Positions 13,283-44,261 of a stretch of DNA of 64,000 bases are shown here, piece after piece; the first letter of the stretch is position 1; each line of letters begins with the position of its first letter. The position numbers and the translations under genes are program-made. The DNA lies in contig NW_002060951.1 in NCBI RefSeq assembly GCF_000150275.1, forward strand, positions 2,786,580 to 2,850,579, in the 5' to 3' direction. The notes under the pieces were generated by a model. The model saw only the letters and a program-made list of their open reading frames with translations. It was not told where the DNA came from and ran no database searches. The DNA is from Trichoplax adhaerens. Taxonomy: Eukaryota > Animalia > Placozoa.

Positions 13283-14664
13283 TTTTTACTTTATCTTAAT
13301 TATAACTTACTATCATGCAAAACCTCACAACTACGAGAGAGTTATTTCTAAGTGCATATATGTATTCACACTTTTGTAAGATTGTATAAATATTTTGTTA
13401 AACAGAACAAAGTGGCGTATACGTAGATTATACGTTAGTGCCAAGAGACCTTAAAATTATACCGTAATCTAATTATCTAATATCTGTAGGTTGCAATTCG
13501 TAGTTATTTTAATGCCCCATGTGACTCAAATATGCAATATATAGTGTTCTATGCGCTTTTGAAGGTATACCTACTGTGCGTACCGTATATACGTAAATTG
13601 TTTAAATGAGTATACAGTATAGTAATATAATTATTATACTTTGTTGCCTACATTTTCTATACTCTAACATCATATGCTCGTAAATTAATTCGGAGGAGAG
13701 TTTATAGCGTGCTGCATTACGCGTATTAATTATACAGAAATGGGTAGTTCATTATAATGTGAATGTATCAAAAAATAAATATGTTTGCGTCAGCTCTTAC
13801 CTCACTGTACATTCACTGATGTTTACTTTTACTTTCAAAGGTAAAAACTGTACATCTAACTATAAAATTAAGAATTTAAATCAGATCTCTTGATCCTTAC
13901 AATTACAGGCAACTAAATTATAATAGTACAGAAAATATTACTGTACGAGCTTATATAATAAGATAAATTTACAAACTTATTACGAGTCGCCCCATCATCT
14001 GCATCTAAAATATGCTCAGATAGCAATAAACTACTTACTGTACAGTATTGATAAGTAGGTAAGTTATATCCAAGTACTTGACATATTAAACTCCGTCTGC
14101 AAGATATTCAGAACTTTGCTAAAATTACTTAATACTACAGTGCTTTAGAAACTATCAGTTCAATTGAGCGTCAAGTAGCTATGTCTTGATATCGTATGCC
14201 TTAAATTGTAAACTAAAAAAGCACAAGTACTTAGTCTGAAAATGTAACCAGAAGTCAAAAGGGATCAACATTGATCCGCCAAAAGACTAACAGAACTGGA
14301 AATTTCAAATTAACTAGCTTAATATCCTGTCACTTTGCTGACATAGATATTATATAGTTCGTTTACGCTTTTAAATAACTATAATATAAACTGACGTTAT
14401 AAGTTACGATCAGGGATTGATAGTAATTGTGAAATATTAATCCTCGATATTAAATAATTATTAATAATTATTGTTATTATCATTATTAATATCAGTGTTC
14501 AGCTGTTGGTAATAAGTAATAATAACATTATCATTGGACTACTGTAATACTAATAATTCACTCAAGCAATATGACATTAAATGTCACTTAGTGCAAAAAT
14601 TAAATTATGGATTTCTGTCCATGCTGTATATTCAGTAGGTAACACCAGGGACTCCTCACCACCC

Positions 14665-14708
14665 CCAGCTTCACAACAATTGAAATTACAGTAACGTTGT
14701 GAAGCTGG
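14665..14708. other. Perfect 13-bp inverted repeat (hairpin) with an 18-nt loop
   Basis: ccagcttcacaac (14665-14677) and gttgtgaagctgg (14696-14708). Confidence 0.7.
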
Positions 14709-14759
14709 ACGGATATCGTGACCTTTACTTAATTTGCATAGAGGAACCAAGTATGGCCT

Positions 14760-14940
14760 AAATACAGTACAACGAAAGTACAGTACAGTACAGTACTCAA
14801 TGTAATGTGCGTATGTGCTCACATGACTTTACCTTATTAAGTACAATGCTGTCGTGTACAGTGACCCACACTGTACTGTAACTGAGTGTACAGTAGTTGC
14901 ATGGAACTGAGTAATATACTGTACTGTACTTCACTGTCAG
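14760..14940. repeat. (GTACW)n array upstream of CHFR
   Basis: aagtacagtacagtacagtac; cactgtactgta; tactgtactgtac. Confidence 0.8.
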
Positions 14941-15114
14941 TAAAAGTAAAAGTTATAACACCCGTGCCCCGCGAATGTATCAGGAACACTAACCGTCCTG
15001 TACCGCAACGATGCGAGTCCGAACAAGTAAACAAAAACAAATGACGATTTAGCTATAAAATTCGAACCATAATATGTATATCTAGTGATCCATTGTTATA
15101 CAATTTCAATCAAC

Positions 15115-18100: not shown

Positions 18101-20174
18101 GAACAAATTACTCTTGTTTAAATGAAATTGTACGGAAAAACCTGATGGGTATTTTCATTAAGTTTGAATTCAATCTAATTTAGGATCTACTGCATGATTG
18201 CATTAGGTAAGCGACCACTAAATATTTTCTATCAATAAATACATATATAGTCAGGTTATTTATTCAGTGAGGTTTACCAATCCAAGCAATCGATTAAATT
18301 TTTAAAATAAAAGTATATTTAAATTTTGTAATTTTCTCTGGCCAAGTTTGCAACCGTGTTTACATTGCTTTTGTTCTGGATGTTATTCTCCGTGGATGAA
18401 TCAATCTAATAACTGTCCCGCCGTAAGTAAACATTCATCTTTAAGGCTTTACCTTTCTAATATTCCAGCACTTACAATTCGCATTATTTTTCAGTGCCGA
18501 ATTACTGTAGTTCAAATTAGTCGAAATCATATCATAAATAACTTAGTAGATGCTTACGTAAAACAATACCCTGAAAAAAAACGAAGCGATGAAGATATTG
18601 AAGATTTGAATGCAAAAAATAAAATCACGAGAGAAATGCTTGATCCGCAAAAATTTATTAAAAGAGCACGAAATCAATTTGGCTTCACATATTACGATAG
18701 CGAAGGGTCGAATGTTGAATCTTACGATGGTGATAGCTCAGATGAGGAGTAAGCGAACTTTATTCGAAATATACGTTTTCTAGCCCCTACATTTATTTAA
18801 AAATTAATTATTATTTCGCCGTTTCCCTTCGATATCTCATATTATAGCGAAAGATGTAGGCAATGTCCAGGGAGAATGTCGTACACCAGTGTAGCAGCTG
18901 ATGATGGCTGCAACAGCGTTACCATTTCCAGCAACACATCAGGTTTTACTTGTAACCTTAATACAATTCATATTTCATGCCAATGTTGCTTTGAGCTTCT
19001 GCCTGATCGAAGATCAGAACCGATATCAGATCGAAGGCCACCTGTTCAATGTAAGCAATACGTTTACTATAGCTATGGAGCGTATTGTCTCTCACTTGGA
19101 AAGAATTAATAATTTGCATCGCTTCAAACTATTCAGGCGAACACTGTTCCGGAGTTTATTGCAATATGTACTGGAGGTGCAATGGAGCTTCTTGTGTTGG
19201 ATGCCTATCTCGATTTAAGGGTATGTACAATGCGAGGATATTCTTGTTATCTGTTTTGTCGACGTAGTAGCGCAAAATAAGATGGTAATTGGTAATATAA
19301 TTATAAGCTGACTAATGACATTGCTACTCCCCTGATTACAGACAAGGAATTTAAGGAAGAATGGCTGAGAGAATTAATCAGTGGCAACGTATATGAAACT
19401 GACATCTTGATGGTAAAAAATTCGATTTAGATGATATTAAATGAAAGAGCTTTATTACAATACTTCTATCGGTTATCCTTATATCTTTAAATATCGGAAT
19501 TGCTTTTATCTAGAATTACCTAAATGACAACCATTTGACTATTTCGGATATGACAAAAACGATCTGTAGTAGACTAGCTTCGAATGAGTATTCAACAAGT
19601 AAGAGATAATTTAAGCTACTTCAATTAAATTATAGAGAGTAAGCCACGTGTTCAATATCTTTCATGGTTTGTAGTAATTGATTAATAAAGTTACTATAAT
19701 TTTTAGCCCTTGTATCAGCGAATTTTTCTATCGAGCAAGCATTATGCCATCGTTGTTCTATTTCCGCTTTGCGCCCTTTGGCTTATTGCTATCGAAATGA
19801 TATCCCGAATACTGAATTACCTGGTAGTGATTAGATATTTGAAAGATTTTTTTACTTTATGAATTAAATTTTATTGGACTTATTCAGTTTAAGAATATGT
19901 TATTGCAATTTTGATTACTGTATGCGTATAGCTGAAGTAACTCGCCGCCCTAACTGTTGGTATGGGAAAGAGTGTCGTACGCAAAAAAACAGCTTGGCAC
20001 ACGCAAGGTAACGAGATAGATGTATCACCATCTATAACACTTATATAAAGGGGTCATCTTTAAATTTTAAATTAAATTTTAAATCTTATTGGCCAAATTT
20101 AACTGTTTATCTTCATTACAATATTTTGCTATAGAAATTATAATCATATCTGCGAAAATAGGAGAGGGAAATAG
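15115..20174 (+). CDS. CHFR: E3 ubiquitin ligase CHFR (FHA, RING, Cys-rich region, PBZ), multi-exon
   Basis: FHA (ITIGR, VSSQHCKL, LVDLSKNGT); RING CGICQDLLHDCISLQPCLHCFCSGC...CPACR; HISCQCCFELLPDRR; PBZ RPNCWYGKECRTQ...HARNYNHICE; TAG at 20172-20174. Confidence 0.93.
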
Positions 20175-20399: not shown

Positions 20400-21025
20400 G
20401 TATTCTCTGTACATGAAGTCTCTACTGTTCAGTGTACTGTACACTATACAGTACTTGTACTGTACTACACGTGTACCTGCACGCGTATTAAGTCTAAATG
20501 TGCGATCCACTGTTTCGAAAACGTTCTTCGATACCATTAAAAGTCATTTAATTTAATTAATTTAAAGCATCACACGATTTTTGTACTGTACAGTACAGTA
20601 CAGTACACAGGATAATACAGTACAGTATACTGTATATCTTGTCAGCTATGTCTTACTTGAGAATAAATAAGTTGATAAGGTTTCGTATACACTGAGCTCT
20701 CTTATCATACAGTACGCTGAGGCTGTACTGTATGCGACATACTTTGCAGTTGTTATCTACAGATGTACTGTACTGCACTCAGTGCACTGTACTGTATAAA
20801 CAGTCATGGACTACTACTGTACAGTGTACAGTACAGGACAAAATGGGACGTGGAAGTGAAGTGAAGCGATGAGATGAAACAGGATAGGACATACTGCACC
20901 GTCGTTCACCAGATGTTGCAGACCTCTGCTGCATAGTACAGTACACTGCAAGGGCACGTGTATGCTACACTGTACAGAACAGTATTGGACTACGCATGTG
21001 ACACATACAGTGTATGTACAGTAGT
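20400..21025. repeat. (GTACW)n array upstream of TYW1
   Basis: Multiple tactgtacagtacagtacagtaca runs. Confidence 0.85.
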
Positions 21026-24100: not shown

Positions 24101-26185
24101 ACTTGAAGACTTCAATTGTTTTCTGCAGTCAATGTTACGAGGACGGGGTGGTTGCTATAAGCATACGTTTTATGGAATTGAGAGTCACAGATGCATGGAA
24201 ACAACGCCCAGTCTTGCTTGCGCAAATAAATGTGTTTTTTGTTGGCGTCATCACACGAACCCAGTTGGTACTGAATGGCGATGGAAAATGGATGACCCAG
24301 AAAAAATCTTTAATGAAGCACTTAAAAATCATTATGGCTTGATAAAGCAATTCAAAGGCAAGTTAGGACATTTAAGAATTCGCACTATAATTTTATTTTG
24401 TAAGCATAACGGAAAAAATCTCACGGATTTCTTAGGCGTTCCAGGGGTACAAACAGAAAGATTCAAAGAGGCCATGGAAGTTAAACATTGTGCTTTATCT
24501 TTAGTCGGTTAGTATAGAAGTAAATTTGCAGTTGCTTACATTGTAAATTAATGTTGGGCTTTCTTTCTGAAACACGGTAGGAGAGCCAATAATGTATCCA
24601 GAAATAAATAAATTTATTGAACTTCTACATGGAAAGGAAATTTCCAGTTTTCTTGTGACTAACGCACAATTTCCAAATGCTATTAGGTTAAAATCATTAC
24701 TATATTTTACTAGATGTAATGTAGTCTTATTTGATCGTCAAAGTAATACTACACGGTATCATGATTAACGAATTATAAATATTTCTGAATATATAAATAT
24801 TAATAGAGATCTTACGCCCGTAACGCAATTGTATGTGAGCGTAGATGCCAGTACTAAAGAAAGTTTGAAAAAGATTGATCGGCCGCTATTTAAAGACTTT
24901 TGGCCTCGATTTCTTAAAAGCCTTTCCGCCTTATCAGAGAAGGTTCTACAATGCGAAGGAATTGTTTCGATATGATCATTTACATTCGCAAATTTTATGA
25001 ATTTAGGGTCAACGGACAGTTTATCGATTAACTCTCGTGAAAGCGTGGAATGCTGAAGAAATTGAGGCATATGCAAATCTTGTCGGGTACGGGAATCCAG
25101 ATTTTATCGAGGTTAAGGTAAGAGGGGAGACGACAGCTGTTCTCTTATATCTTGTGACAATTTTATAGGATTATAGATCTACGTTCGGTTAGTTTAGACC
25201 TTGCATATGTCACTGTAGTAACTAGATATAACTATATTAAACAATATTTTTCATAAAAAATATTTCTTATTTACTAATAGGGAGTAACATATTGCGGCGA
25301 ATCAAAAGCTTCTAAGCTAACAATGGAAAATATTCCTTGGCATCAAGAAGTAAGATAGCTTGATTCTTTAACATCTTATTATGCTTCCTCACTATTTTGG
25401 AATGCTGTACAAATCCAAAACCTCCTGGTTTTTTAGGTTTTATCATTTACAGACAAATTAGTTGATAATCTTCCGGAATATGAAATTGCTTGCGAGCACG
25501 AGCATTCAAATTGCGTTCTGGTTGCACATAAGAAGGTAGACTACCTTGTACTGTTTAATTAATAGAGTTTTCTATATAGCAAAGCGAACATTTTGTGCTA
25601 TGGAATGTTGTATCGTGAGACATAGCACATAATTCTAAAAATTTGATAGATGATAATACGGTGTTTATGTACACAACCATCGTTTAGTTGCATATATCCA
25701 ATAATTTTAGCGTTTAAGAATTGTCCCACTCATCGAGATATATTCATAATCACATATTTGACTTTTATTTAACAGTTTAAGGTTCATGGCAGATGGCACA
25801 CTTGGATTGATTACGCGAAGTTTCATAAACTGGTTTGAGATAATAATAGTTCTTAATAACAAGTAGTCAAACATACTACTGTATTTTTATTAAAGATTCT
25901 GTGATTAGTAATAATTAGTCTGATTATATAAAGTATATATTGTCTATATTATTTCAATAGTCTTGTTTAGTCATGCTAATTCTTATTATAGTTAGAATTG
26001 TTACTAATTCTCCAATAATTTAGATTGCTGAATTTGCCTCCAATGGAGGTAAGAATTTCGACGCAAGTGATTATATGGCATTGACACCTGACTGGGCTGT
26101 TATCGGGCACCCAGCTCACGGATTTGATCCAGTGGAAACAAGATGGCATAGAAAGAAAAATAATAAAGATATTGGTGGTTGTTGA
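21109..26185 (+). CDS. TYW1: tRNA wybutosine-synthesis protein 1 (flavodoxin + radical SAM), multi-exon; the first two exons are less certain
   Basis: Flavodoxin VYYGSQTGTAK and YAVFGLGNSVY; GYKIIGSHSGVKLCRWTK; LRGRGGCYKHTFYGIESHRCME; CANKCVFC (CxxxCxxC); HCALSLVGEP; FLVTNAQFP; EVKGVTYCG; C-terminus KDIGGC*. Confidence 0.96.
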
Positions 26186-27339: not shown

Positions 27340-29948
27340 TTACAGAACATTTTCAGATAATAAATAAGAATTTAGTTCATTCATTTCATTCCCTAATAGT
27401 TTCGTAACTCTGATAGCCTCATTGGCTTCTTCACCACCAATTTCCTCTAGAGCGATTAAGGCAGCTTCTCTTACATGAGATATAGGGTCATTACGCCTTA
27501 AAACATACAAAGGTACAGAATCATAATAAGATTTGGCTTTGTAATAATTCGTAGATATCCCAATTCAGAGTTGCTTAATGTTAATGAAGGTATTTAATAT
27601 TGAAAACTTTTACAATATTAAATTGCACACGTACCATCGATTTAATATGTTTATGATTGAACTTTCTGCCTTCATATGTCCCAAAGATAAGCAGGCGCTT
27701 TCACGAACCAGCCGATCTTCATCTTGAAGTAACAATATTAGTTTATCGATATGTTTCTTACTTTTAACACCTGTTCTTGCTAGTGCTATGGAGGCAATAG
27801 CACGAATATTCGGATCTGTATCATCGAGAAGATCTGCTAGCGCGGAAATTACTATTGGTGTTTGATATTTTCCTAAGATTTTCGGAAATTGCGTTGTTTA
27901 GCGTAAAATGAATCTTAAATTTTTTGCTAATCTTTTAAACTGGAATTAGGTAGAAATTAAAATTTTACTAAGAGTCATCCTGCTGATTCCTGAAAAATGT
28001 TTAATACCCATACCTAAATTTTCAACAGCTGCCATGCGAACTGTCGACTCCATATTGAATACTTCATGTATTGCTAAGCGACTAGCAACTTGATTGCTTA
28101 CACAGCTCAAAAATTTATGTGGCTTTGACCAATTTTTACCACAAAAGGCGGTAAACTCTTCTTTACGAATGACATCTTTTTTAGTAAAAATATCTTTCCA
28201 AATCACTCCTTGAAGCAACCATTCTTGACGATCATCCGGATAATCGCGCTTTAAAACGTCATGGTAATCGCTCACAAACGCCTTTCTAAATTCAACCCAT
28301 GTTGTCTCTTGCGCTTGAAAATGGCGATCCCAAAAATTTACTGCCGTGACAAGACTCGACTTAGCTAAATTTTACATCAAATGTATTATATTATTTATTT
28401 CTTTTCCATATAAGAAATATTATTAATTTAAGAGTAATATAGTAACAATTAATAAAGGTGTGGAAATTAGTTCACTATCGTAATTTTGTTAATAATTAAC
28501 ATGAAAACATCGATTTCTTATTTTGCTGGAAGCCTACCACTACTCATGGATGAATGTTGTACTGTAGATGCAGTTTCTTCTTGAAAATTAAATTGGTCAT
28601 CTTCGATAAATGATGCTCTTCGATTCTCCAAAATTTCATCATGTGAGCTTATTTTCCTAATTTCTCGTTTTACGCCCTCTAAAACTGTTGCATATTCCTT
28701 ATCATAGCGCTCTTTTTTGCAAAAGAATACCCAGTTCAGTTTGGACAAAGTTAACTTTCTGAATAGAAAGTGGACAAGAATCATGACATAAGTCATTAAT
28801 TTATTAATTTTCCCGCATTTTAAGTCATGTTACAGTAAATCTTTTACATACGTACAGGGCAAAACCCATTTCTTGATTGATTTCTCTGAAATACCGTAAA
28901 GATAACGGTACTATAGGTTTGTTCGAGATATAGGCAAGAGAGACTTCATCCACTTTTGCTTTATTCTTAATGTATGATATACTGAGTACTACTATTATCA
29001 CCTGAATTCATTATCAAAACAATGATATGCATCAGTGCAGCGATGTAAGGATATACGCAAATTTATTTTATTTACGATCGTGACCAATTTCAATATACTA
29101 ATTAAAGCTTTTAGATCTTGTATAATTTATTTGCAACATTTTAAAAACTCGTGCTATGATATACTACTGTAATTATTAGAAAAATATCGTTTTCAAAATG
29201 CAGTATACCTATCACTATATGTGAGTGTCTAACATTGTTACCTTTGCGTTTACAATTGCTTTGCCTTTATCGATATTATCTTTTAACTTTTCGCTACCAT
29301 ACCTAAGATGCCAAAATTTAAGGCCATGATTCCGCAAATAAGCTATAAAGTAATAAAATAAAATAAACATAATCAGTTCTATTCAAAAGAAAATTAGAAT
29401 CAGATGTTATAGTAAAAAGAAATCGTCACTTACCAGTAATTGGAGTTACAATTTCTGTATCATCAGGGCTGTAACTAATGTAGATATCATAATCTACTTC
29501 ATTTGATTGTTTATAAGCTGTGCTTGTGTCTTCAAATGAATCCAAAGTTATACTAGTATTTATATCAGTCGCTTGCAGTTGGTTATCTCCGTCCTTCAAA
29601 TTTTTATGACGAAATTTTAAAATTGGATACTTTTCTTTAGCGGCTATACTAGTACAGAGTCTACAGACCTCTTCGCGTGGGTCTTTAGAGGTTATCGCTT
29701 GATTCTTTACTTCTGGAAATTCCGTATCTGTTTACAGTATACCACAAGTGGGCATACAATGAATGTCCCGACATTAGTAATAGTAATCTGTATGAGATTA
29801 AAATTTACTGTAAACTTATATTACATATATATATATATATATATATACACTACGTTGCTAATAACAGATATCGTAACCGACCTATTACAGGTGATATACC
29901 ATTATTTACATTTTTACGGCTAGAGCCACAAGAAGCAATTGATCCCAT
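27340..29948 (-). CDS. TIR domain + Cbl-like EF-hand region + HEAT-repeat protein, paralog A (N-terminus MGSIASC), about 8 exons
   Basis: Spliced frame: MGSIASCGSS..., YDIYISYSPDD (TIR box 1), AYLRNHGLKFW, GKAIVNAKVIIVVLSISYIKNKAKVDEVSLAYISNKPIVPL, FWDRHF...WVEFRKAF, HEAT repeats (LLDDTDPNIRAIASIAL; LLQDEDRLVRESACLSLG; RNDPISHVREAALIAL); TAA at 27340-27342. Confidence 0.85.
29825..29846. repeat. (AT)n microsatellite, intronic
   Basis: Run of atatat... Confidence 0.9.
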
Positions 29949-30367
29949 GTCCTCGACAACAATACTGTATCTGTATCGTAATTGCTCACAAGAGATGCAG
30001 TATTTGATTAAAAGAAAAGAACTAAAGGATCAACACAATATTACTGTATACAACATTTGAAAGTAGGGCTGTCGTTCGTTAATAACGTAAGAAGTAACTA
30101 CCTTAAATTCGTTAACAATACAGTATTAGTATGCAATGCACGGATAGCGGCAACGACTAATTTTTACAAGAGTATTTGACCAGTATTAAACTACTGTAAT
30201 TAGTTAAAGTGTACGTAGTCCTGACCGTTACCATGGTACTGTAACTGTATCGGCAAAAAAGATAAAAGAAGGAGAAAACAGGAAACGTTTGCTGGATCTC
30301 ATACAAAAGTATTACAGTACAGTATACAGTACTGAACGTTCTGTAGAAGTCCTGACTGAGGTGATTA

Positions 30368-30477
30368 CGGTGGCCGAGGTGGGCCAAATGCTCTCTTGCA
30401 CAATCTATAGTATTGTATTCATAGTACTGTCACCTTCTTTAACTGTCAGCTGCCTTCTTTTAACACCTCGGCCACCG
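30368..30477. mobile_element. 110-bp MITE, Tc1/mariner type (14-bp terminal inverted repeats, TA target-site duplication)
   Basis: TA|CGGTGGCCGAGGTG ... CACCTCGGCCACCG|TA; perfect inverted repeat; too short to encode a transposase. Confidence 0.75.
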
Positions 30478-30628
30478 TAGATTTTACATAAAGTATTTCG
30501 TAAATTAATTGATTTATCACTCGTTATTTCTTTGCTATCTAATAAAGTATCTAAAGCCGTGCAACACTGTACAGTGCAATCAATCTATCTATTAGTTATT
30601 GTTAGCTATCTAAAGATTATAAAACAAA

Positions 30629-33600
30629 ATGGCAAGTAACGTGCCAGAGCACAAACATCTGGACGTAATGATTAGCTATAGCAGGGTTAACCAAAACGTT
30701 ATGAGAAAATTGAAAGGTGAATAAACAAGTAATTCTTGACTAAAATGATACAGAAAATGACTTACACATAACAAAATATAATATTGTAAACTTTAGTTTG
30801 CTAATATGTATCTATCTATTTCATATTACTGAAACCTTAATTGTTACAGTAAATTATGAGCTCCCTAAACAATATTTTCTTAATACCGTACAAGTACTGT
30901 ATATTTTAATTGACTGTAAAATACAATAATACCTTAGAAGCAAGAATCCAATAGCTTGGCACAGTTTCATTTCATAAATACTGTACATACGTCTTAACAT
31001 ATCTGTTATAGTTAATCATTTTTAATGACTAGTAACAGGCAACTATCAAGAAATGTACGTTGTGCTATTATTAAGTAATGGTTAATTAGGATTGATTATA
31101 ATCATATGTAATTATAATATGTAAACATGTTAATGTACTAGTATGTTTTCTTCTTGCTAATGGACTACACAGCAAAATTATATTTATTTTTATCAACTGA
31201 TCTCAACGCTTTTTATAAATGGCCACGAATCGTATCAGTAAAATTGTTTCGGTTGAAAATTAATTTCATGAAACTCGGAAGTTCCATAAATTACAACTAC
31301 GAATGCTCCAGCTTAAACAGATAATCTAGTCATTATGAAAATAAAACGTACATTTATTGATAAATTTTTTCTTTTAGCAATGAACTATTACTTAATTATC
31401 CAGGACCAAGTTTACGCTATATACGCATACGCATATATTTTTATATATAAAAATATTTCATGAGTCTTTGTGAACAATTTAGCTTGCTAATCTATTATCA
31501 CTTCAATTGAAGGTATGTCGTAGCACCAATGCTAGAAGTAATTAAGAAATTATTGTTTTTTCCGATTTATTAATATTTGAATTAAACTTATTTTTGCTTA
31601 CAGACTTTTTGATTGAGAATGGCTTAAAGGTATGGGTAGATGAGATTGGCCTTGAGGCAGGATCAGAATTTCTGAACATAATAGGGCAAGCAATTGTTGA
31701 CGCTAAGGCAAGTCGATGTAAAATCAAATGAAAACATTTTACTAGCAGTTTATAGCTGCATCTTGGCAATATGTGAGCTAGAAATAAACTTACGTCTCTA
31801 AATTACCCGTAAAGTCCTGACTCTTCCGTTTATAGATTTCATACTTTCTAAAATATCTACCCTTTACTCATACCCTTACTTGATCAAAAAAGTATATTAT
31901 AATTTTACCCAATCATCACCTACGTATTATAGAAGGAGCTATCTTCTAATCCGTAGCTGGCTTTTGATCTATACTAGCCCTAATCTGGCAGTGACCTAAT
32001 TTTATATATCTTCGCTAACGTAAGCTGCTTTCCCTTTAGGCCTTTCTGATTATCTTAAGTAAGAATTCAGCTACATCGAAGTATTGTAGGGATGAATTGG
32101 CATTAGCCTATATTTCTAACAAGCCAATTATTCCCGTAGCTCTCGAAAAGAAAAGTGAGATTTTATCTGTTCTTGAATTTGGCATGTAAGTTATATATTT
32201 TAATATATGTGCTAGTAAATATTTTTTTGTAACTGCACAATGTAACTGTATTTTTCTGCAAATTTGAAATGATGTAAATTTTTTGCAATAGATTCATGTA
32301 ATTATTCTTTGTTACATACTAAATGATTACGATACATTTGAGTTCGTTAAATGGTTTAATCTTACTGGATTGTCATTTCTCACAGGAAACTAACTTTAGC
32401 TTCTATGGAATGGATATCTTTAGCTGATGATATGCAATTTGATCAGCAATTAAGCAAAATTATAGCAGCTGTTAACACATTCATCTGCGATACTGATGTG
32501 AGTGAACATAACAATAACTCGGTAAAAAGCCAAGATCGTTTAGTGAATAGACAGATTTCAAAACACAAGAAGTTATTTCATGACCATGAAGAAAAAGACT
32601 TTATCAGAGCTGGTGAAAAATTTATTGAATTTTTAAAAGATTATTATCGTATGGAGGATACAATACCTTGGACACTTTTTGAACAAAAATTTTATGAAAT
32701 AAATGGACCAGAATTAGAAAAATTGTGTAGTTTTGACAATGAGGGTTGGTTGCTAGGAGTTTTATATCGTGAACTAGAGGTGCTTGAAGCAAATGAAAAT
32801 GTTACTAAACAACAGTTGCTAGCATTTACAGATAATAATATAGATATATTTTGGGAAAACGTAGAAGAACAAGCGATACAAAGCTATGCAATGAGAGAAG
32901 TATTTAATATGGATTCCTCTGTTAGAATTCCAGCGATTATGAATTTATGTAAGTTGCAATAAACAAAACACAAACAATTCAGTAGTTCATACGATCAGTA
33001 GTATAAACTCATATCAAAAGTTTGTATTACAATGTAGCTATAGATTGTTTTTCCAAATTGATCAGTTAGCTTGTCATTTTAGCAAAGATTAAAAGCCCTG
33101 CAGTCATGGAGGCATTATCTGATCTGCTAACGGATAAAGATCCTAATATCCGATCAGTCGCTGCCATATCACTTGGTCGACTTGGAGTGCAAAACAATCT
33201 TAGAATTACAAGAAGATTGATCAATTTACTTAATGACAGTGATAGGCTTGTTCGAGAGGCTGGCTGTCTAGCTTTGGGACATATGAAAGCTCAACCCGCT
33301 GTTCGAAAGCTCGTTAAACTTTGGTAAGAGACTTAGGGTATTAGTACTTCTTTATCTTGCAGTAAGTTGATATACGACCAATTGTTGATATATCAATCTT
33401 ATAAGCTATACGTTCAACCAGCTTATATGTGATTTCATAACTACAGTAATGACTATAAAGGACCATATACATCTATACAAGCAGAGTTGATTATTTCAAA
33501 ATATCGCTATCTTAGTAAGCGAGAGAAATTTATTTAGACTGTTCACTTAGGTCGAGACCTAAAAGTGCAGTACTTAATATTATATTATTATCACACCACA

Positions 33601-33845
33601 GATTCATGTTCTTAAAATTATTCCTATCTAGAACCTTGCACTTCTTTTTTAAAAATATTCCAACTTTAAGTTGTATCATTACATTGTATATTTCCAGGCG
33701 TAATGATACAATTTCTCATGTTCGTGAAGCAGCTCAATGTGCACTAAAACGCATAGGAGGTGAAGAAGCTGAGAAGGCCTTACATATTACCAAAGTTTTA
33801 ACCGAAGAAATAAGAGCATTAACTACTAAAAATAATACCAACTAA
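30629..33845 (+). CDS. TIR domain + Cbl-like EF-hand region + HEAT-repeat protein, paralog B, 6 exons
   Basis: MASNVPEHKHLDVMISYSR; FLIENGLKVWVDEIGLEAGSEF; GQAIVDAKAFLIILSKNSATSKYCRDELALAYISNKPIIPV; TIPWTLFEQKF; HEAT repeats (LLTDKDPNIRSVAAISLG; LLNDSDRLVREAGCLALG; RNDTISHVREAAQCAL). Intron positions are shared with paralog A. Confidence 0.9.
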
Positions 33846-34699: not shown

Positions 34700-35330
34700 G
34701 GTAAATCAGTACAGTATACGCCGCCTAACGATTACAGAGACAGTACAGTACAGTACTGTACAGTAATTTGTATTCTTGTGGACATACAGTACAGTAATTG
34801 CGCTGTACACTGTACAGTCCTGTAGTCAAAGAAGAATCATAGCAGATAGCAAGGACCACTCAAGTAACAATGTTACACCTTTTCCACCGTCTACCTTCTC
34901 AGTACATAGAAGACGGAAGGGAAGGAGAGGAGTAGAAGGTGGAAAAATGGTAAAATTCTTTATTTGAGTAGTCCCTCCAGATAGCCCTGAGATAGGTATT
35001 CCATAATTACAGTACGCGACTGTACAGTACTGTAAAATCCACGGTAGCGTACAGTACTTCGCATTTTGTACTGTACTGTACTGTACTGTACAGTACAGTA
35101 CAGTACACTTTGTCTGAGCCTATTTATTAGTACAGTACTGTACTTGACAATACTACAGTATACTGTACACAGTGTACAGTACTGTATAATCTATACAGTA
35201 ATACTGTACAGTATACAGTACTGTACTGTACTGTACAGTACAGTATAGTGTATGGTACATTACAGTACAGTAAAGTACTGTACAGTATTTCTAGTTCTCT
35301 TTGGGTGCAAATCATCGTTGTACTGTATAA
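34700..35330. repeat. Dense (GTACW)n array upstream of the GAS2-like gene
   Basis: ttgtactgtactgtactgtactgtacagtacagtacagtacac...; densest at about 35010-35290. Confidence 0.9.
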
Positions 35331-35409
35331 AAATTAAATTAATTTTATATACTATTTAATAAACGATAATTCGCGGTCATGTTATGTTGTTGGGTTTTTA
35401 ACTGTCAAT

Positions 35410-38400
35410 ATGGTCGACCTTCAAAGCCCAACACTGGTTGAATCTCAACTAGCTGATGAGTATCCTGATATTATTCGTGATGAAATAGAAAAGGAGTATC
35501 TTACCGCACTAAAGGAAGATATTACGGAATGGATTAATGAATTATTAGTCCTTGATTTAATGCCCGATAATTTATTGACGGCTTTAGAAGATGGAATAGT
35601 ATTGAATCAATTAGCACAGTACGTTCATCAAGTTGGTGATAGTTATTTTGATTCGCATACTGGATTGTCTCGGAAAGTCAAGAAACTTCCTTCTAAATGT
35701 CCAAAGTATCGGCAGAATGCATCATCTAACCCGTTCTTTGCGCGGGATAATATTTCGAATTTTATTACCTGGTGCAAACAGCTAGGTGTTCCCGAAGTGA
35801 TCATGTTCGAAACTGAAGATTTAGTGTCCCAAAAAAACATTAAAAGTGTTTTACTCTGCCTTTTAGAAATATCTAGAATAGCCGTGAAGTACGGTGTTGC
35901 ACCAACGGCTATTATAGCCCTTGAGAACGAGATGGACAAAGACCAAGGGCGAAGCGATTGCAGCGACGACAGTTGCGAAACCTCATCAGTGGTATCTATT
36001 GCAACAGTCGGATCCCAGACCGATCTTTTTCCAGACGATAAGCCAATGGTCAAAAGAAGAGGTAATTCAAATTCTCCCAGTAGAGGAACTAAACAGAAAT
36101 CTATGATTCCCGTAAAAGGCATAAAGAAGCAAAATGAAGATACAGTTGAAAAATCTGAGAATGCGATTGATATCGACTGTAAGGTAAGTAATTATAATCA
36201 ACTGACGAAACACCAATTTCAGTTTTAGACCCTACCAAGATCGAACCTTCTTAAGGTATGATACGCAATGCTTTATCCGCAGTACAGTAGAAAGCTGTTC
36301 TAACCGCAAATTTTTGTTGGTGTACAGCATAATAGTTTCATGTAAACGGAGATTTGTAGTACTGTACTGTATAAATTCGTTATAAATACTATAGCTTTAC
36401 GTCTGCTTGCGTGTGATACCGCATCATTATAATTACATGTTACTATTGTTTTACACTAGGCAATCAGTATAATAACAGAATATACTGTTGACTGAAGAAA
36501 GTTAAGAAAATGCTGATTCGAACTACACTTAGTTATTTGATGTGCATTAGTGGAACGTAATACATAGTATAGTGTGTGTGATCAGAGGCTCCTCTAAAAT
36601 TAAAATCTTTCTCAATTTTTAACTGAGTAATCCCTAGCATAACCCAATCAATAATACTGTAATCGGGTAACCAGTTTACTGTATTCGGTTTGCATTAAAA
36701 TACCAGATTTTAGTTCTAATAATTCACTTAGTCGAACTAAAATCAAGTATTTCAAACTATTCTGGACTGCAGTGCGACAGCAGCTTATGTCTCTGATATA
36801 CCATAATTGATTCATAAATCATCATTCTATTGTACATAGCAAAACATATCGTGATTTCTAAATTTTCGTGTACAATACTCGTATTTCTATGGTTTTGCTA
36901 CAGATCCAAAACTTACTTGCAAAATGTACCTGTAAGAGAAAATTTATGTTAAGAAAATTATCGGAAGGAAAATACCGTGTAGGAGAAGATGGACCTGTTA
37001 TTTTCATAAGGGTCAGTTCTGTATATCTAACGGTTTGAAACTTTTTTATAGCTTCATCGAACAATGATTAAATCATAAAAATCCAGTCCAGTGATAATTA
37101 ATAATATTTTGTATTTAAATTGCTTTATTGTGCTTCTACGTATACAGTATACGCGTATTACTATCCTTAAATTAATAATGTCACAGTTTATATAAATGGG
37201 ATGATGGTACTGAGCTTGAGTATTATTTTTAGTCCATGCAGTCTGTACAGACTTATACCAGAGGCTACTAAAGAAGGAACACTGTACCACTGCTACAGTA
37301 TGACATAGAATGGCATAGTGAAGAACCAAAATGGTCAGGACTTCCAAGTGTTAGGAAGGCTTACTTTAGATTCTGCAGACACCCTGCGGTATAATCTGCC
37401 GTCGAGGGTATTAAAGCCGAGAGTTTTTAAGGGAGGGGGGTTTGGAATGTATAATAAAATAAAATATATAATATGGCTGCGCGCTATGATAACAGGAACG
37501 ATAGGCACTTATACCGTACGATTACTTATATGCCTAACATGGTATACTATATATAGATTATTTTACATTTATTTCTATGGATTCTAGCATGACGATTAAA
37601 GCGGCTTATCTTTATGCTGCTAAGAAATTGACTTATTCAACCATTTTAAAACTTGAATACATGAACGTGTTATAGCGTCTCACCAGACACTTTTTTATAT
37701 AATTTTTAATTGTAGGTATTGAGACATCATATAATGGTTCGCGTTGGAGGTGGTTGGGATACACTACGAAATTACGTTGATAAACATGATCCATGTTTGT
37801 ATACCGGTATGCTAACTATTACAGATGATCGAAGAATAAGTTTCTTTCTGTTTATGGCATTTACGTTTTTGCTCTTACAGCTATTGGAGAGAACAATGAT
37901 AAAAAAGCGAAAGATAAAAAATCACCCGGTATTCTATGATAATTTAGTTGATATGAATATTCCGTACGTTAAATCAACCTAATATGTCCAGTCCTATAAG
38001 TTTAATATCTCATGTGTATGCTCTAGCATAGTTTCCTGATGCATACTACAGACCCTGTCTTAGAATGTAATTGCGTGCTACTTATCTTATTCATTCTTCA
38101 TTCTAGCACTTACACCATCTCACAGCGTAAGCTCCATTAGCAGCCTTACCAGTCGACAAAAATCACCTCATATTCCAATAAAAGACAGTAGCTCAACTCG
38201 TAGCAGTTCTGACGATATTAAAAATAATTTATCAGCGCGTTCAAGTCCAAAATTCGATCGCCATAGACTACGCTCATCGAGTTTGACTTTTTCTGAAGTA
38301 AATGCGGATATGCAGCTGTCTCATAACTTACTGAGGAATTTTACACCTGTTGATTCTAGTAGTCACAAAACAATTCATTATTCTACACCTGTAAGTAAAA

Positions 38401-40673: not shown

Positions 40674-43627
40674 TCATAACAGTTTTTTCTTCTTTTTTTC
40701 TTTCTTTTTCTTTTTCTTTTCACCTTCTTCTTGACGTCTCTGAAAAATAATTTGATATAATTTTCAGAGATCATTAAAATATTAATTAATTGACAAATCT
40801 GTTGGTCAGTTAAAAATTGCTGAGATTAATCTATAACATCAACTAACCAGTTTTTTGTGCCTTTTAATTTCATCTGAAAGGATTTGCATAGGACGTTATG
40901 ATTTGTTATAATATTATAAATGATACAGTCGACATTCAGTAGCAACTACAGTATTATACATTGGGTAATAACTTATATCTCGTTGTTCTTCAGATCAATT
41001 ACCGCAGTACATTAAAAATTTCATTAAACATAAAAAGATGTCAATGTATAATAGAAGATTCTTACCATCAGCTCCAGTATTGTTATGACCATCAACCTTT
41101 AATTCACTATTTATTTCCCGGTGTTTGTGTTTTTTATGCCGGTGTTTTTTTCTATTTGACTGTTGATATTGCATCAAGTACTGGTCAGGAATCTATAGCA
41201 TCGCAAAATCGAGATTTTATCAGTAGCTGTACGATTGGTAGCAACGTAACTTGTCGTAATTCTTTCATGTTTAAGTACATGCCTTGCCGGGCATTAAATG
41301 AAATGCGCTTAAAGAATGGTTGGATAACGGCAATAATTCTCTCCCGCCAATCGGAGGCTTATCAATTAGGCCACTCAGACTATAGAATAATATAGCTTGA
41401 AATTAATCAACCTTAAAACAATTATACTATACCATTTGAATTATCATGGTAGGAGTAATTATTGCAAATAATGAATCTGGTGCAGATACACAGTTTCCAA
41501 CTGTTTTATAAGAGCATTTTTTATACAAAACAGTAACTATCTACCGTAAGTTAGCGTTTACTATAAAAAATTGCAATACGTACCCGGGATCAGCTTTCGT
41601 AACCGGCACGTCTACTCTACCTAAGTAAGATGAAACAAATTTATTTTTATTCGTATGATTCCTAGTAGCAACCGTGTATTTAGGGTAAACAGGTAGAAAT
41701 ATTAGATATAATTGTATCTTAACGAAATACGCATAAAGAATACGAGGCATGAAAAAGTATTTACTAACCTAATACACTTTATTATGAGTCAGCAAAGGTG
41801 TAATTTGACATCAGCATAAAATAGTTATGAACGATTATGTAACTTTGTACAAATAGTACACTGTCAGAAGATCTAATAGTTGTGTACAGAATTTACTACA
41901 CATGAATTACAAATGTAATTTTAACTTAAACTACGAACTAAAACAATTCTCGAATTTCGTAATTAGCAGAGAAGATATTTGCAGTCATACGCTGATGGCT
42001 AGATAATTTATTTAATTTTTTGATATACTATGCTTAAAATAGTATCTTAGAATGAACGTCCTGCTAGAAGAAAATACAGAAGGTACGGAGTAAAGGTGGT
42101 AATCCGGTAACGTTATACAGTATGTACTTTGCTTGGATTACTTAGAGACGTTCCGGCAATGTGAAAATCTATCTCTGTAGCTTAACTATAAAATATGTAC
42201 ACCGCTAAATCAGTAGCACTGTGCACATTAGGGTAAACGTATAATTATATATTATCATTACATGTATTAAATATTACTGGAAGCTTATACAGTATTGTAA
42301 TAAAAGTTTAAAAGTTTTATATTCTAAAGAGGTCCAGAGAATATAAGGTCAAAGGTAACCACAAGTGCGAATACGATGTTTACGGCTATTAAAATACGTT
42401 GTAATTATATACCAATATCATTTATTCACTACTAACATTTACGTCTGATTGTAGATTAATAGCAGCCTGATCTCTCAAGACATTCGAGTACAGTACTACA
42501 ATACACTAAGTGATTAGTCATGATTGCAAATTACGGCAAATCAATTCTTATCCAGAGAATTTTTAAATATTGGAATATTTTATTATTCTACGATTACATC
42601 AGAACTACACGTGTATGCTTGTATTACACATCATAAGTCAAGTTCAGCAAAGAAAATTATTTATGTGTATGATATAATTTAAGTTACTCAATAATAACTC
42701 GTACCATATTAATCTACTGTACAATTGATTTATGTTGATTGATCAGTAACTCCGCATACAATGTACTGTACAGTACGGTATACAGCGTCTTGCTATCATT
42801 CATGATCATGACGACAAATGCAGAATTTATGTAGTGTTATAATCGTATAACAACTGATTAATCATATATAATGATGCGTGGTGCATGTGCGACAAAGTTC
42901 ATTTACTATAATATATGGTTATTAAACTAGTAATACAGACGTGTCGGTTTTTCGTACACAAGTACAGTATTTGCATTTTGCTTTAAATTAACAGTAAATA
43001 CGCAGATAGGCCTCGTTTGAGTCGTTTCCACTAGCTAAAAAGCTACAGTACTGTAATATATAGTAACAATTTTTAAAAAGTTGACGACTAAGTACTGTAA
43101 TTTAATCGCGTCACTATGGAAAGATTTAAGAATCGACAAATTTCGGTGACTACGATAGTGTTTGTATACGATTTTAATAAATTACATTATTTGCTACTCA
43201 CCTGGCAATTCAGGTAAAAATGTACTAAGATTTTCTTTCAGTTTCCTTCCGTGATATTGATTATATATATCGATCAAGTCACATTCAACGATTAAATTTG
43301 ATGCTCCACTCATCTTAGCTGGAACCACTGTAATAGTGATAAATCAATCACCAGTTAAAATTGAATATACAGATATAATTGCGTAAAAAAGTATTTCATA
43401 TTCGTTGCTTGCAGTTTCACTCGCAAGAAATTCTTTATTAACTAATCCACACTACCCAGTGTAATTGCTATCTTTAAAAATGTGCGTTAATATAACCTGC
43501 AAACGAGCGCATGGATACCTGGATTATCACTTAATAAATAAAAGTTGGAAAATTCGTTTCGGTTACGGTCAGGCTTAGATCTTTCAGTACTGTTATCTTT
43601 TTCATGTTCTCCAAAGCCGCTTTCCAT
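40674..43627 (-). CDS. MED19: Mediator subunit 19, multi-exon; 3' exon joins are uncertain
   Basis: FYLLSDNP; MSGASNLI; YHGRKLKENLSTFLPELPGRVDVP; LSGLIDKPPIGG; FHLMPGKIPDQY; KKHRHKKHKH; terminal poly-Lys tract. Confidence 0.88.
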
Positions 43628-43699
43628 GACATAGGGCAAAATTTTCTATTTTTGCAATCTCTAATCTTTACAGTTATGTCGTTTTAGTTAGTTTACTCT

Positions 43700-44205
43700 A
43701 CAGTACTGCTAGTGCGCTTCTCTTCGTTTCAATGAAATGAAATACTGTACTTACTACATGTACCGTACTGTACTGTACAGTACAGTACAGTACATGAATT
43801 AAGCAACACTGGTAAGAATACTGTACAATGCTACAGTACAGTACTGTACTTGTATGGTAGCTGTTAACTAGTCCCTGGTTAAAGATAAAAGGCCCCTCTT
43901 TTCCTTTGTGCACAGTGTACTGTACAAGTGTACAGTACAGTACAGTACAGAATTGTAGAGTGTACTGTACAGTACTATGAAAAGTACTGTACTGTACAGT
44001 ACTGTACGAACAAAAAAATCGCTATCATCTGTGTTACCCGGGTACAGCAATCTTAAGACTGAAAGTGTGCAAAAAGTACTGTACTGTTCGAGCAAAAAAT
44101 CGCTATCATCTGTGTTGCCCGGTTACTGTGTACAGTACAGTACAGTACTGTACAGTACTTTATAAATACCACATGCACGGTACTACAGTACAGTACAGTA
44201 CTACG
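43700..44205. repeat. (GTACW)n array in the MED19/GALM divergent spacer, with a local duplication (about 43980-44047 and 44071-44127)
   Basis: Repeated caaaaaatcgctatcatctgtgttRcccgg embedded in tacagtac/tactgtac runs. Confidence 0.88.
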
Positions 44206-44261
44206 GCGAAGTGATAAATTAAATTTAACCTCCTTAAAGACTGACAGTGTGCGAATTCGTC

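What the first reader, a model, noticed from the sequence alone, without database searches (positions are those of the whole stretch)
27340..33845. Head-to-head pair of paralogous TIR-EF-hand-HEAT genes: candidate two-component animal TIR signalling/immune module
Seen: two divergently transcribed genes with start codons about 680 bp apart. They share an architecture (N-terminal TIR, a helical middle region, 3-4 C-terminal HEAT repeats) and five intron positions, but are strongly diverged, which indicates an old inverted duplication. There is no LRR, Ig, death, SAM or transmembrane segment, so these are not TLR, IL1R, MyD88 or SARM1. Established: enzymatic TIRs (SARM1, plant TNLs, bacterial Thoeris) cleave NAD+ through a conserved Glu; SARM1 is gated by ARM repeats; plant sensor/executor NLR pairs (RRS1/RPS4) lie head to head. 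Inference: a co-expressed heterodimer in which HEAT solenoids gate a TIR NADase. I do not recognise this architecture from any characterised animal protein.
Basis: partly seen in the sequence, partly recalled or inferred. Interest (0 to 1): 0.85.

Follow-up and report, generated by a model that had tools for sequence, protein, structure and literature searches.

The report
Ancient head-to-head TIR-HEAT gene pair
Two neighbouring, oppositely oriented Trichoplax genes encode related but unequal TIR-HEAT proteins of an uncharacterised family found from sponges to amphioxus, and the two-gene arrangement seems far older than placozoans, which points to a conserved two-part signalling module whose chemistry is still unknown.

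Summary
RNA contigs from four studies give two spliced, divergently transcribed genes. A is TRIADDRAFT_59118 (minus strand, 9 exons, 499 aa). B is TRIADDRAFT_59119 (plus strand, 6 exons, 429 aa); its database model lacks 26 aa. The start codons lie 680 bp apart. All five B introns are shared with A in position and phase.

Both proteins have a TIR_2 domain, an EF-hand-like pair without calcium-binding loops, and about four PBS-lyase-type HEAT repeats.

The architecture is not unique. It defines an unnamed family in sponges, placozoans, spiralians, echinoderms, hemichordates, amphioxus and a tunicate. No member is characterised.

New here: A and B belong to two ancient subfamilies. B-type keeps a conserved BB loop and a plant-like S..YC.DEL glutamate motif. 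A-type has a degenerate, shortened BB loop. A clade uniting A and B is rejected (p-AU 0.007).

An unrelated spiralian-like contig carries the same A/B head-to-head pair. In six named bilaterians the two genes have near-adjacent identifiers on contigs of equal listed length.

Heterodimer formation, HEAT gating and NADase activity remain untested.

The scan had already noted the A/B asymmetry on this same stretch.

The parts
29882..30157 (-). Gene A exon 1: 5' UTR and codons 1-22 (ATG at 29948). The protein starts MGSIASC, an N-myristoylation-type start.
   Evidence: RNA contigs and joint 29727/29882; model; motif test
29669..29727 (-). Gene A exon 2 (N-terminal extension)
   Evidence: Joints in four runs; borders
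29434..29593 (-). Gene A exon 3: end of the N-terminal extension and TIR strand A (DYDIYISY)
29242..29342 (-). Gene A exon 4: TIR helix A, strand B and the degenerate BB loop
28856..29001 (-). Gene A exon 5: TIR strand C, helix C with the D-E-V glutamate, strand D
   Evidence: Pfam TIR_2 on the exon; alignment
28538..28758 (-). Gene A exon 6: end of TIR (KLTLSKLNWVFF, an A-type signature) and linker helix
28014..28364 (-). Gene A exon 7: EF-hand-like pair and first HEAT helix
   Evidence: paralogue match to B exon 4
27635..27872 (-). Gene A exon 8: HEAT repeats
   Evidence: HEAT_2 57.7 bits
27340..27496 (-). Gene A exon 9: last HEAT repeat and stop codon (27340-27342). The 3' UTR runs on below 27340.
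30158..30436 (.). Shared upstream region between the ends of the A and B transcript contigs. It is a putative bidirectional promoter and holds part of a cluster of TACAGTA/TACTGTA heptamers.
   Evidence: Contig ends (contigs do not fix true starts); composition and motif counts
30437..30716 (+). Gene B exon 1: 5' UTR and codons 1-29 (ATG at 30629), TIR strand A (LDVMISYS)
31604..31707 (+). Gene B exon 2: TIR helix A, strand B and the conserved BB loop (VWVDEIGLEAGSEFL). It is followed by a GC-AG intron. 26 aa of this exon are missing from the database model TRIADDRAFT_59119.
32040..32185 (+). Gene B exon 3: TIR strand C and helix C with SKYCRDEL (candidate catalytic Glu, residue 83), strand D
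   Evidence: TIR_2 28.2 bits on the exon; alignment to the plant TIR motif SSWCLDEL
32386..32948 (+). Gene B exon 4: end of TIR, long helix, a disordered stretch, the EF-hand-like pair (about 32594-32833) and the first HEAT helix
33083..33323 (+). Gene B exon 5: HEAT repeats
   Evidence: HEAT_2 50.1 bits; joint
33698..33845 (+). Gene B exon 6: last HEAT repeat and stop codon (33843-33845)
   Evidence: The loose end of the RNA contigs at 33324 continues with the letters found at 33699

Best explanation
The stretch holds two real Trichoplax adhaerens genes, TRIADDRAFT_59118 (A) and TRIADDRAFT_59119 (B). They are transcribed away from each other from a shared upstream region of about 280 bp.

Each encodes a protein with no transmembrane segment or signal peptide. 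Each has an N-terminal TIR domain, an EF-hand-like pair without calcium-binding loops, and about four PBS-lyase-type HEAT repeats. They belong to an uncharacterised family found from sponges to amphioxus.

A and B are the local representatives of two ancient subfamilies.
- B-type keeps a highly conserved BB loop and an S..YC.DEL motif. Its Glu aligns with the catalytic Glu of plant TIR NADases.
- A-type keeps the Glu but has a shortened, unconserved BB loop and no aromatic residue four positions before the Glu.

The divergent A/B arrangement recurs in an unrelated animal contig. The pair therefore seems to have stayed linked since before placozoans and bilaterians split.

Most likely mechanism (inferred, not shown): the two proteins act together as an asymmetric TIR pair. 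B-type would be the signalling-competent TIR, possibly cleaving NAD+. A-type would be a non-equivalent partner or regulator; in Trichoplax it alone carries an N-myristoylation-type membrane anchor. The EF-like and HEAT part would be the binding or autoinhibitory module.
For: Shown:
- Spliced mRNAs of both genes occur in four studies.
- Gene models and shared introns.
- The A model is identical to P0151. The B model differs from P0150 at one residue.
- TIR_2 and HEAT_2 score above the Pfam cut-offs.

Family range:
- 55 relatives of the middle exon among 1.84 billion representatives.
- Named members in molluscs, annelids, nemerteans, a brachiopod, echinoderms, hemichordates, amphioxus, a tunicate and sponges.

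Two subfamilies:
- In the 39-row careful tree, A groups with A-type proteins at 100/98.
- The AU test rejects an A+B clade (p 0.0068).
- In the 84-row tree the A-type group (33 rows) and B-type group (51 rows) each have SH-aLRT 98.
- Column counts: BB-loop Gly is present in 45/51 B-type rows, while 31/33 A-type rows have a gap there. An aromatic at -4 occurs in 42/51 B-type rows and in few A-type rows, where the commonest residues are H, Q, A and T. Glu is present in 43/51 B-type and 26/33 A-type rows.
- A-type signatures 'VWH/Y' and 'K[IL]NW.F'.

Linkage:
- L009 carries a B-type gene on the plus strand and an A-type gene on the minus strand upstream. Their starts are about 4 kb apart or less.
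- Near-adjacent gene identifiers on contigs of equal listed length in B. floridae, Lineus, Lingula, Dimorphilus, Mizuhopecten and Glandiceps.

TIR type:
- Z 18.0 and 26% identity to the SARM1 TIR.
- Profile hits to Cat1, AbTIR, SARM1, Roq1 and RPP1.
- PADLOC hits to SAVED-TIR, pAgo-TIR and ThsB.
- Motif alignment to a plant TIR.

Anchor: A starts MGSIASC. MGxxxS-type starts occur in 26/51 B-type and 7/33 A-type proteins.
Against:
- NADase activity is not shown.
- The Glu is Gln in 8/51 B-type rows. In A-type rows it is Gln in 3/33 and Leu or Ala in 4 more, and it is Gln in the A-type gene of L009. Catalysis therefore cannot be universal in the family.
- The TIR fold matches scaffold TIRs (Hydra TRR-2 Z 17.9, MyD88 16.6) nearly as well as enzymatic ones.
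- Linkage is not universal. In Ostrea, Tubulanus, Patella and Solemya the identifiers are far apart. In Anneissia, Aplysia, Lymnaea, Saccostrea and Ylistrum the two genes sit on contigs of different listed lengths.
- Four other metagenome loci with 4-10 kb upstream of a B-type gene show no A-type gene.
- Identifier adjacency is a proxy.
- Flanking genes are unrelated: radical-SAM, RING, and CH plus GAS2.
Confidence: 0.55

Rival explanations
1. The two proteins work independently as non-enzymatic TIR adaptors or regulators of MyD88-type signalling through homotypic TIR contacts. This is the role proposed for ecTIR-DC proteins. On this reading the head-to-head arrangement is only a relic of an ancient inverted duplication, kept by slow genome rearrangement.
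For: - Kamm et al. 2019 (PMC6321704) and their citation of Gerdol 2017 propose adaptor or regulator roles for such families.
- The fold matches scaffold TIRs almost as well as enzymatic ones.
- Glu is replaced by Gln in whole subclades.
- Linkage is broken in several species.
Against: - The divergent pair is kept in Trichoplax and in a distant spiralian-like contig.
- Identifiers are near-adjacent in six further lineages.
- There is a consistent, lineage-wide asymmetry of the BB loop.
These are more than a neutral relic would predict, but none of them proves coupling.
Confidence: 0.3
2. One reading: a co-expressed A-B heterodimer in which the HEAT solenoids gate a TIR NADase, as the ARM domain gates SARM1.
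For: - A candidate catalytic Glu with an aromatic at -4 in B, in a plant-like motif.
- Among solved TIRs listed, SARM1 shows the highest sequence identity (26%).
- A helical-repeat domain sits in the same polypeptide.
- Both mRNAs are present together.
Against: - Nothing tested here bears on gating.
- The HEAT repeats are of the PBS-lyase/alphaRep type, not SARM1-like ARM.
- The domain order is reversed and there is no SAM oligomeriser.
- The Glu is not invariant.
- The complex prediction gave no verdict.
Confidence: 0.2
3. A is a decaying or functionless duplicate of B, with a degenerate TIR on its way to loss.
For: - A is the faster-evolving copy, with end branch 2.2 against 1.3.
- A deviates at many positions that the family conserves.
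Against: - A has an intact 499-aa frame across 9 exons.
- It is spliced and expressed in four studies.
- It is 497/499 identical to its Trichoplax sp. H2 orthologue.
- It belongs to a subfamily retained in at least 30 species across phyla, with its own conserved motifs.
Confidence: 0.03

Closest known systems
SARM1 (ARM-SAM-SAM-TIR NAD+ hydrolase)
   Same: - A TIR joined to a helical-repeat domain in one cytosolic protein.
- The B TIR model superposes on the SARM1 TIR at Z 18.0, rmsd 2.5, 26% identity.
- A Glu with an aromatic four residues before it.
   Different: - The domain order is reversed (TIR is N-terminal).
- There are no SAM domains.
- The repeats are PBS-lyase-type HEAT, not ARM.
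- An EF-hand-like pair is inserted.
- Two unequal paralogues are present.
- No activity is known.
Plant paired TIR-NLRs RRS1/RPS4 (head-to-head genes, TIR heterodimer of unequal partners)
   Same: - Divergent gene pair.
- One partner has a canonical TIR and the other a deviant one.
- The RPS4/RRS1 TIR structures are among the fold matches (Z 16).
That the plant pair is head to head and unequal is from established knowledge, not tested here.
   Different: - No NB-ARC, LRR or integrated decoy domain.
- The animal pair is hundreds of millions of years old rather than lineage-specific.
- Interaction is not shown.
[quoted passage not shown] 2017, as used by Kamm et al. 2019 for Trichoplax sp. H2
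   Same: - A TIR family widespread in invertebrates.
- No vertebrate among the hits here.
- Function unknown.
- Kamm et al. count 8 such proteins among 16 TIR proteins of Trichoplax sp. H2.
   Different: I could not read Gerdol 2017, and Kamm's Figure S1 is an image. So I cannot say which numbered family this is. I also cannot say whether the A/B split, the BB-loop asymmetry or the linkage were described.
Prokaryotic defence TIRs (ThsB, SAVED-TIR, SPARTA TIR-APAZ, Cat1)
   Same: - Profile similarity of the B TIR: PADLOC E 1e-7 to 1e-8; Cat1 E 1.4e-9.
- Fold Z about 17 to the SPARTA TIR.
   Different: - No prokaryotic full-length relative was found. The genome-contig scan was negative, but it used a single peptide pattern.
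- The C-terminal domains differ.
CBL TKB EF-hand domain (Pfam Cbl_N2) and alphaRep / PBS-lyase HEAT-like repeats
   Same: - Middle domain: Z 6.0 to CBL residues 183-264; family profile E 7e-4 to CBL-B; weak Cbl_N2 hits in two orthologues.
- HEAT part: E down to 6e-61 to alphaRep proteins.
   Different: - There is no calcium-binding loop.
- The Z score is in the range where helical arrangements can match by chance.
- The four-helix bundle and SH2 domains that flank the EF-hand in CBL's TKB are absent here.

Membership tests
TIR domain (Pfam TIR_2, PF13676) | Profile score above the curated cut-off (28 bits) | tested here: met
   B copy (P0150) 78.9 bits; A (P0151) 51.9 bits. Single exons score only 14-28 bits because the domain is split by introns.
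Enzymatic (NAD+-cleaving) TIRs | Glutamate at the position of the catalytic Glu (plant SSWCLDEL motif, SARM1 E642) | tested here: met
   B exon 3 aligns SKYCRDEL with SSWCLDEL of chain 7xoz (E 0.59 for the 48-aa exon, but the register is clear). A has DEV at the same column. Across the family, Glu is present in 43/51 B-type and 26/33 A-type rows.
Enzymatic (NAD+-cleaving) TIRs | Conserved BB loop and aromatic residue at -4 of the Glu | tested here: inconclusive
   B and the B-type rows have them (Gly 45/51, Tyr/Phe 42/51). A and the A-type rows do not (gap in 31/33; the commonest residues at -4 are H, Q, A and T). That these features are needed for catalysis is established knowledge for other TIRs, not tested for this family.
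Enzymatic (NAD+-cleaving) TIRs | NAD+ consumption or nucleotide product in vitro or in cells | not testable with these tools
   Needs a biochemical assay.
SARM1 orthologues | ARM - SAM - SAM - TIR order with a C-terminal TIR | tested here: not met
   The TIR is N-terminal, there is no SAM hit, and the repeats are HEAT_2.
TLR / IL-1R / MyD88 | LRR or Ig ectodomain with a membrane segment, or a death domain | tested here: not met
   No such Pfam family was found. The most hydrophobic windows are TIR core strands.
Canonical EF-hand calcium sensors | 12-residue calcium-binding loop (PROSITE PS00018) | tested here: not met
   0 of 84 family members match. No Pfam EF-hand family matched A or B.
EF-hand-like fold (Cbl_N2 type) | Paired helix-loop-helix units that superpose on an EF-hand domain | tested here: inconclusive
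   The model m46c0fa35cec1 has two helix-strand-helix units at pLDDT 81-97. VIA-align gives Z 6.0 to the CBL EF-hand, and many EF-hand proteins score Z 4-5. Foldseek finds nothing below E 1. The profile matches CBL-B at E 7e-4.
PBS-lyase-type HEAT repeats (HEAT_2 / HEAT_PBS) | Profile score above the cut-off and an alpha-solenoid fold | tested here: met
   HEAT_2 67 and 91 bits. AlphaRep chains match at E down to 6e-61 and TM 0.75-0.89 on the target.
ecTIR-DC families (Gerdol et al. 2017) | TIR family conserved across invertebrate phyla and lacking in vertebrates | tested here: inconclusive
   Hits come from sponges, placozoans, spiralians, echinoderms, hemichordates, amphioxus and a tunicate, with no vertebrate or arthropod listed. 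However, the searches scored only the 8000 candidates sharing most words, and the defining paper is not held.
Conserved divergent gene pair (bidirectional promoter) | The same two paralogues are head to head in distant lineages | tested here: met
   This window; Trichoplax sp. H2 locus tags 006850 and 006851; L009 with A-type on the minus strand and B-type on the plus strand. For six named bilaterians only identifier adjacency is known, not orientation.

The most novel reading that the evidence does not exclude
A metazoan-wide, genomically linked two-gene TIR module, older than the placozoan-bilaterian split. The B-type protein would be a second family of enzymatic, NAD+-derived-signal-producing TIRs in animals. 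The A-type protein would be its obligate pseudo-enzyme partner or membrane anchor, and the two would be co-regulated from a shared promoter. That would make it an animal counterpart of plant sensor/executor TIR pairs.
Probability: 0.15. Interest if true: 0.85.

Novelty: new variant of a known kind. Interest (0 to 1): 0.62.

Why it matters
[quoted passage not shown] It then adds one TIR-fold hydrolase, Raw.

This finding is a second, widely conserved animal TIR family with three notable features:
- an enzymatic-type motif;
- an unequal partner paralogue;
- apparent preservation of the two-gene arrangement since before bilaterians arose.

That gives a concrete and cheap test of whether NAD-based TIR signalling exists in animal lineages beyond SARM1. 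Such signalling is known from bacteria and plants.

Even if the proteins turn out to be plain adaptors, a paralogue pair kept head to head across such distances is a rare case of deep microsynteny. It would point to shared regulation.

Tried and rejected
This gives no verdict on binding.
No coordinates or orientations could be fetched for the named animal genomes, so linkage there rests on gene identifiers and equal contig lengths only.
- The protein-atlas search on the middle exon gave only unnamed bacterial clusters at or below 0.94 and no usable lead.
- phmmer of the middle exon against PDB sequences found nothing.
- The genome-contig scan for prokaryotic relatives found none. It used one peptide pattern, so this is a weak negative.
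- Literature: Gerdol et al. 2017 is not held. No paper in the library names these genes or a 'TIR-HEAT' protein. Whether the amphioxus adaptors bbtTIRA and bbtTIRC belong to this family could not be checked.
- The reading of A as a pseudogene was rejected, as set out under the rival explanations.
- Long-branch attraction as the cause of the A-type grouping was considered. It was made unlikely by denser sampling (A's end branch fell from 2.2 to 1.2) and by shared A-type motifs. It is not formally excluded.
- Joined models: the spliced models were joined only inside scripts, for translation, intron mapping and comparison. Searches used exon references or the database proteins P0151 and P0150.
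- Read laying was given 6,000 letters.
Full report
**What is in the sequence**

The window comes from a 105.6-Mb, 1414-contig genome. The proteins it encodes are catalogued as Trichoplax adhaerens TRIADDRAFT_59118 and TRIADDRAFT_59119.

I laid assembled RNA contigs of four runs from four studies on 27341-33340. They show two spliced transcripts on opposite strands. I moved the joints to canonical intron ends. I also recovered one 91-nt intron that the repeat filter had hidden.

- Gene A lies on the minus strand. It has 9 exons, its ATG is at 29948, its stop is at 27340-27342, and it encodes 499 aa.
- Gene B lies on the plus strand. It has 6 exons, its ATG is at 30629, its stop is at 33843-33845, and it encodes 429 aa. 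One of its introns is GC-AG.
- 680 bp separate the two start codons.
- The transcript contigs end about 279 bp apart. Contigs do not fix true transcription starts.

The A model is identical to database protein P0151. The B model differs at one residue from the Trichoplax sp. H2 protein P0150. The T. adhaerens database model of B (403 aa) lacks 26 residues of exon 2, which is the BB loop of the TIR domain.

I built the joined models only inside scripts. Every search used single exons by reference or these database proteins.

**Check of the observation**

- A and B are 37.6% identical over 415 aligned residues.
- All five B introns coincide with A introns in position and phase. A has three more introns.
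- Full-length copies score TIR_2 at 78.9 bits (B) and 51.9 bits (A), and HEAT_2 at 67 and 91 bits. No other domain family matched.
- The genome holds no third copy.
- The AlphaFold model of B (mean pLDDT 84, pTM 0.72) shows three parts: a TIR domain at residues 11 to about 125; two helix-strand-helix units at residues 183-260; and nine helices forming a capping helix plus about four HEAT repeats.

The one qualification concerns the 'EF-hand'.

- No member of the family has a canonical calcium-binding loop (0 of 84).
- Foldseek finds nothing significant for the middle domain.
- The exhaustive aligner puts the CBL EF-hand second of 48,161 chains (Z 6.0). Many EF-hand proteins follow at Z 4-5.
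- The family profile touches CBL-B at E 7e-4.

I read this as an EF-hand-like pair that probably does not bind calcium in the canonical way.

**The family**

I used the middle exon of B as the query because it is the family-specific part. It found 55 relatives among 1.84 billion cluster representatives. The long ones all carry TIR_2 at the front and HEAT_2 at the end.

Profile searches added about 150 proteins. They come from molluscs, annelids, nemerteans, a brachiopod, echinoderms, hemichordates, amphioxus, a tunicate and two sponges. Nearly all are named 'uncharacterized' or 'TIR domain-containing'.

So the architecture is not unique to this locus.

Kamm et al. 2019 count 16 TIR proteins in Trichoplax sp. 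H2, eight of them in the 'ecTIR-DC' families of Gerdol et al. 2017 (PMC6321704). This pair is very likely among them. I could not confirm that, because the defining paper is not held and the relevant figure is an image.

**Two ancient subfamilies**

This is the main new result.

- A careful tree of 39 proteins puts A with a set of divergent bilaterian paralogues at support 100/98. It puts B at the base of the main group.
- The best tree that holds A and B together is 25.7 log-likelihood units worse (p-AU 0.0068). I named that test after seeing a quick tree, and long branches are involved.
- After a search with an A-type profile, an 84-protein tree resolves an A-type group of 33 and a B-type group of 51. 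Each has SH-aLRT 98, and each contains Trichoplax plus deuterostomes plus spiralians. The two sponges fall at the base of the B-type group.
- The simplest reading is a duplication after sponges diverged and before the placozoan-bilaterian ancestor.

The groups differ systematically.

- B-type proteins keep VWVD..GL.AG.DFL..IGQAI. The loop Gly is present in 45 of 51.
- B-type proteins also keep S..SKYC.DE, with an aromatic at -4 in 42 of 51.
- A-type proteins have an unconserved, shorter loop, with a gap at that Gly in 31 of 33.
- A-type proteins have mostly non-aromatic residues at -4 and their own motifs: W followed by H or Y, and K[IL]NW.F after the TIR.
- The Glu itself is kept in both groups (43/51 and 26/33). 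It is replaced by Gln in whole subclades.

This agrees with the earlier scan note on this stretch that B is canonical and A degenerate. I tested that note here and extend it from one locus to the whole family.

**Linkage**

The metagenome scan returned 19 loci. One of them, L009, is an 11-kb contig of an unidentified spiralian-like animal.

- It carries a B-type gene on the plus strand, with a canonical BB loop and SKFCQDEL.
- Upstream on the minus strand it carries an A-type gene. Its start reads MTEEGGERICDIILTY at about 2181. It has a degenerate loop and the motif LTLAKINWIFF. Its best matches are all A-type proteins.
- The two starts are about 4 kb apart or less.

This is the same divergent A/B arrangement as in Trichoplax.

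In six named bilaterians, the A-type and B-type genes have identifiers 2 to 12 apart and sit on contigs of the same listed length. These are B. floridae, Lineus, Lingula, Dimorphilus, Mizuhopecten and Glandiceps.

In other species the two genes are far apart or on different scaffolds. Four other loci with 4-10 kb upstream of a B-type gene show no partner.

So the linkage looks ancestral and often retained, but it is not universal. Orientation is directly seen in only two lineages.

**What kind of TIR**

- The B TIR model superposes best on the human SARM1 TIR (Z 18.0, rmsd 2.5, 128 residues, 26% identity).
- Hydra TRR-2, the grapevine TIRs RPV1 and RUN1, and SPARTA TIRs are within one Z unit. 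MyD88 scores 16.6.
- By sequence profile the nearest solved TIRs are Cat1, TLR15/TLR2 and bacterial TIRs including AbTIR, then SARM1, Roq1 and RPP1.
- PADLOC gives SAVED-TIR, pAgo-TIR and ThsB for B, and much less for A.
- Exon 3 of B aligns its SKYCRDEL with the SSWCLDEL of a plant TIR cyclase/hydrolase.

These results show that B has the residues expected of an enzymatic TIR. They do not show activity, and fold similarity cannot separate enzymes from scaffolds.

**Mechanism**

Shown:
- two expressed, unequal paralogues transcribed from a shared upstream region;
- subfamily-wide asymmetry;
- recurrence of the divergent pair in a distant animal.

Inferred:
- The two proteins act together.
- B-type is the competent TIR, possibly an NADase.
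- A-type is a partner or regulator.
- The EF-like and HEAT part acts as a binding or autoinhibitory module, by analogy with the ARM domain of SARM1.

One further feature supports a division of labour. A starts MGSIASC, an N-myristoylation-type start with a nearby Cys, while B has no N-terminal extension. Across the family, MGxxxS-type starts occur in 26 of 51 B-type and 7 of 33 A-type proteins, including sponges and deuterostomes. Membrane attachment by lipidation is therefore probably ancestral. In Trichoplax it is carried by A only. This rests on a motif, not on an experiment.

**Surroundings**

The flanking genes are unrelated: a radical-SAM exon, a RING finger, and a CH plus GAS2 domain gene. 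This is not an immune gene cluster.

**Verdict**

The heterodimer, gating and NADase steps remain hypotheses.

The finding is a new variant of a known kind: a TIR signalling protein with a helical-repeat domain. Its real interest lies in the ancient, asymmetric and apparently linked paralogue pair.

Noticed in passing
window 31604-31707 and intron 31708-32039: The public T. adhaerens model of gene B (TRIADDRAFT_59119, 403 aa) lacks 26 residues of exon 2, the TIR BB loop. RNA contigs from four studies support the 429-aa form, with a GC-AG intron after the exon. The Trichoplax sp. H2 model (TrispH2_006851) has the full form.
   Followed up: yes
window 29927-29948 (first codons of gene A): A begins MGSIASC, an N-myristoylation-type start with a possible palmitoylation Cys. 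MGxxxS-type starts are common in the family (33 of 84 proteins) but absent from Trichoplax B.
   Followed up: partly
window-wide; clusters at 11001-11500, 14501-15000, 20501-21000, 30001-30500, 35001-35500, 43501-44500, 51001-51500 and 59001-60000: The heptamer TACAGTA/TACTGTA occurs 312 times in the window, against about 15 expected from base composition. It forms dense clusters. One cluster (8 sites between 29963 and 30325) lies in and beside the shared upstream region of the pair. Another lies just before the CH/GAS2 gene. The clusters may instead mark promoters or intergenic regions.
   Followed up: partly
window 32486: T>G in RNA contigs of three of four runs changes Cys147 to Gly in B. 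Gly is the residue of the Trichoplax sp. H2 protein, so several 'organism A' runs carry the H2-like allele.
   Followed up: partly
window 30801-31425: Low-depth RNA-run contigs (depth 3-6, against 40-85 on exons) lie inside intron 1 of gene B. They could be unspliced precursor, DNA carry-over or a separate transcript.
   Followed up: no
window 30327: One contig of run X5 ends here and continues for 255 letters unlike the window. It lies inside the shared upstream region. The cause is unexplained; it could be a chimera, a variant or a splice to elsewhere.
   Followed up: no
window 18306-18749, 24102-24509, 35338-36225, 37716-37979: Neighbouring open frames carry RING-finger, radical-SAM, calponin-homology and GAS2 domains. 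They are ordinary genes unrelated to the pair.
   Followed up: partly
L009:1531-1680 (minus strand); family alignment column of B residue 83: The candidate catalytic Glu is Gln in the A-type gene of L009 and in 8 of 51 B-type proteins. These include the oyster, scallop and Solemya sequences inspected. Part of the family may therefore have given up catalysis, if it ever had it.
   Followed up: partly
proteins P0220 and P0221 (ENA contig of 517,750 bp): Two near-identical B-type proteins are listed on contigs of the same length. They group with a third unnamed ENA protein (P0017) and, on long branches, near the tunicate. This is probably a recent duplication in an unidentified animal.
   Followed up: no
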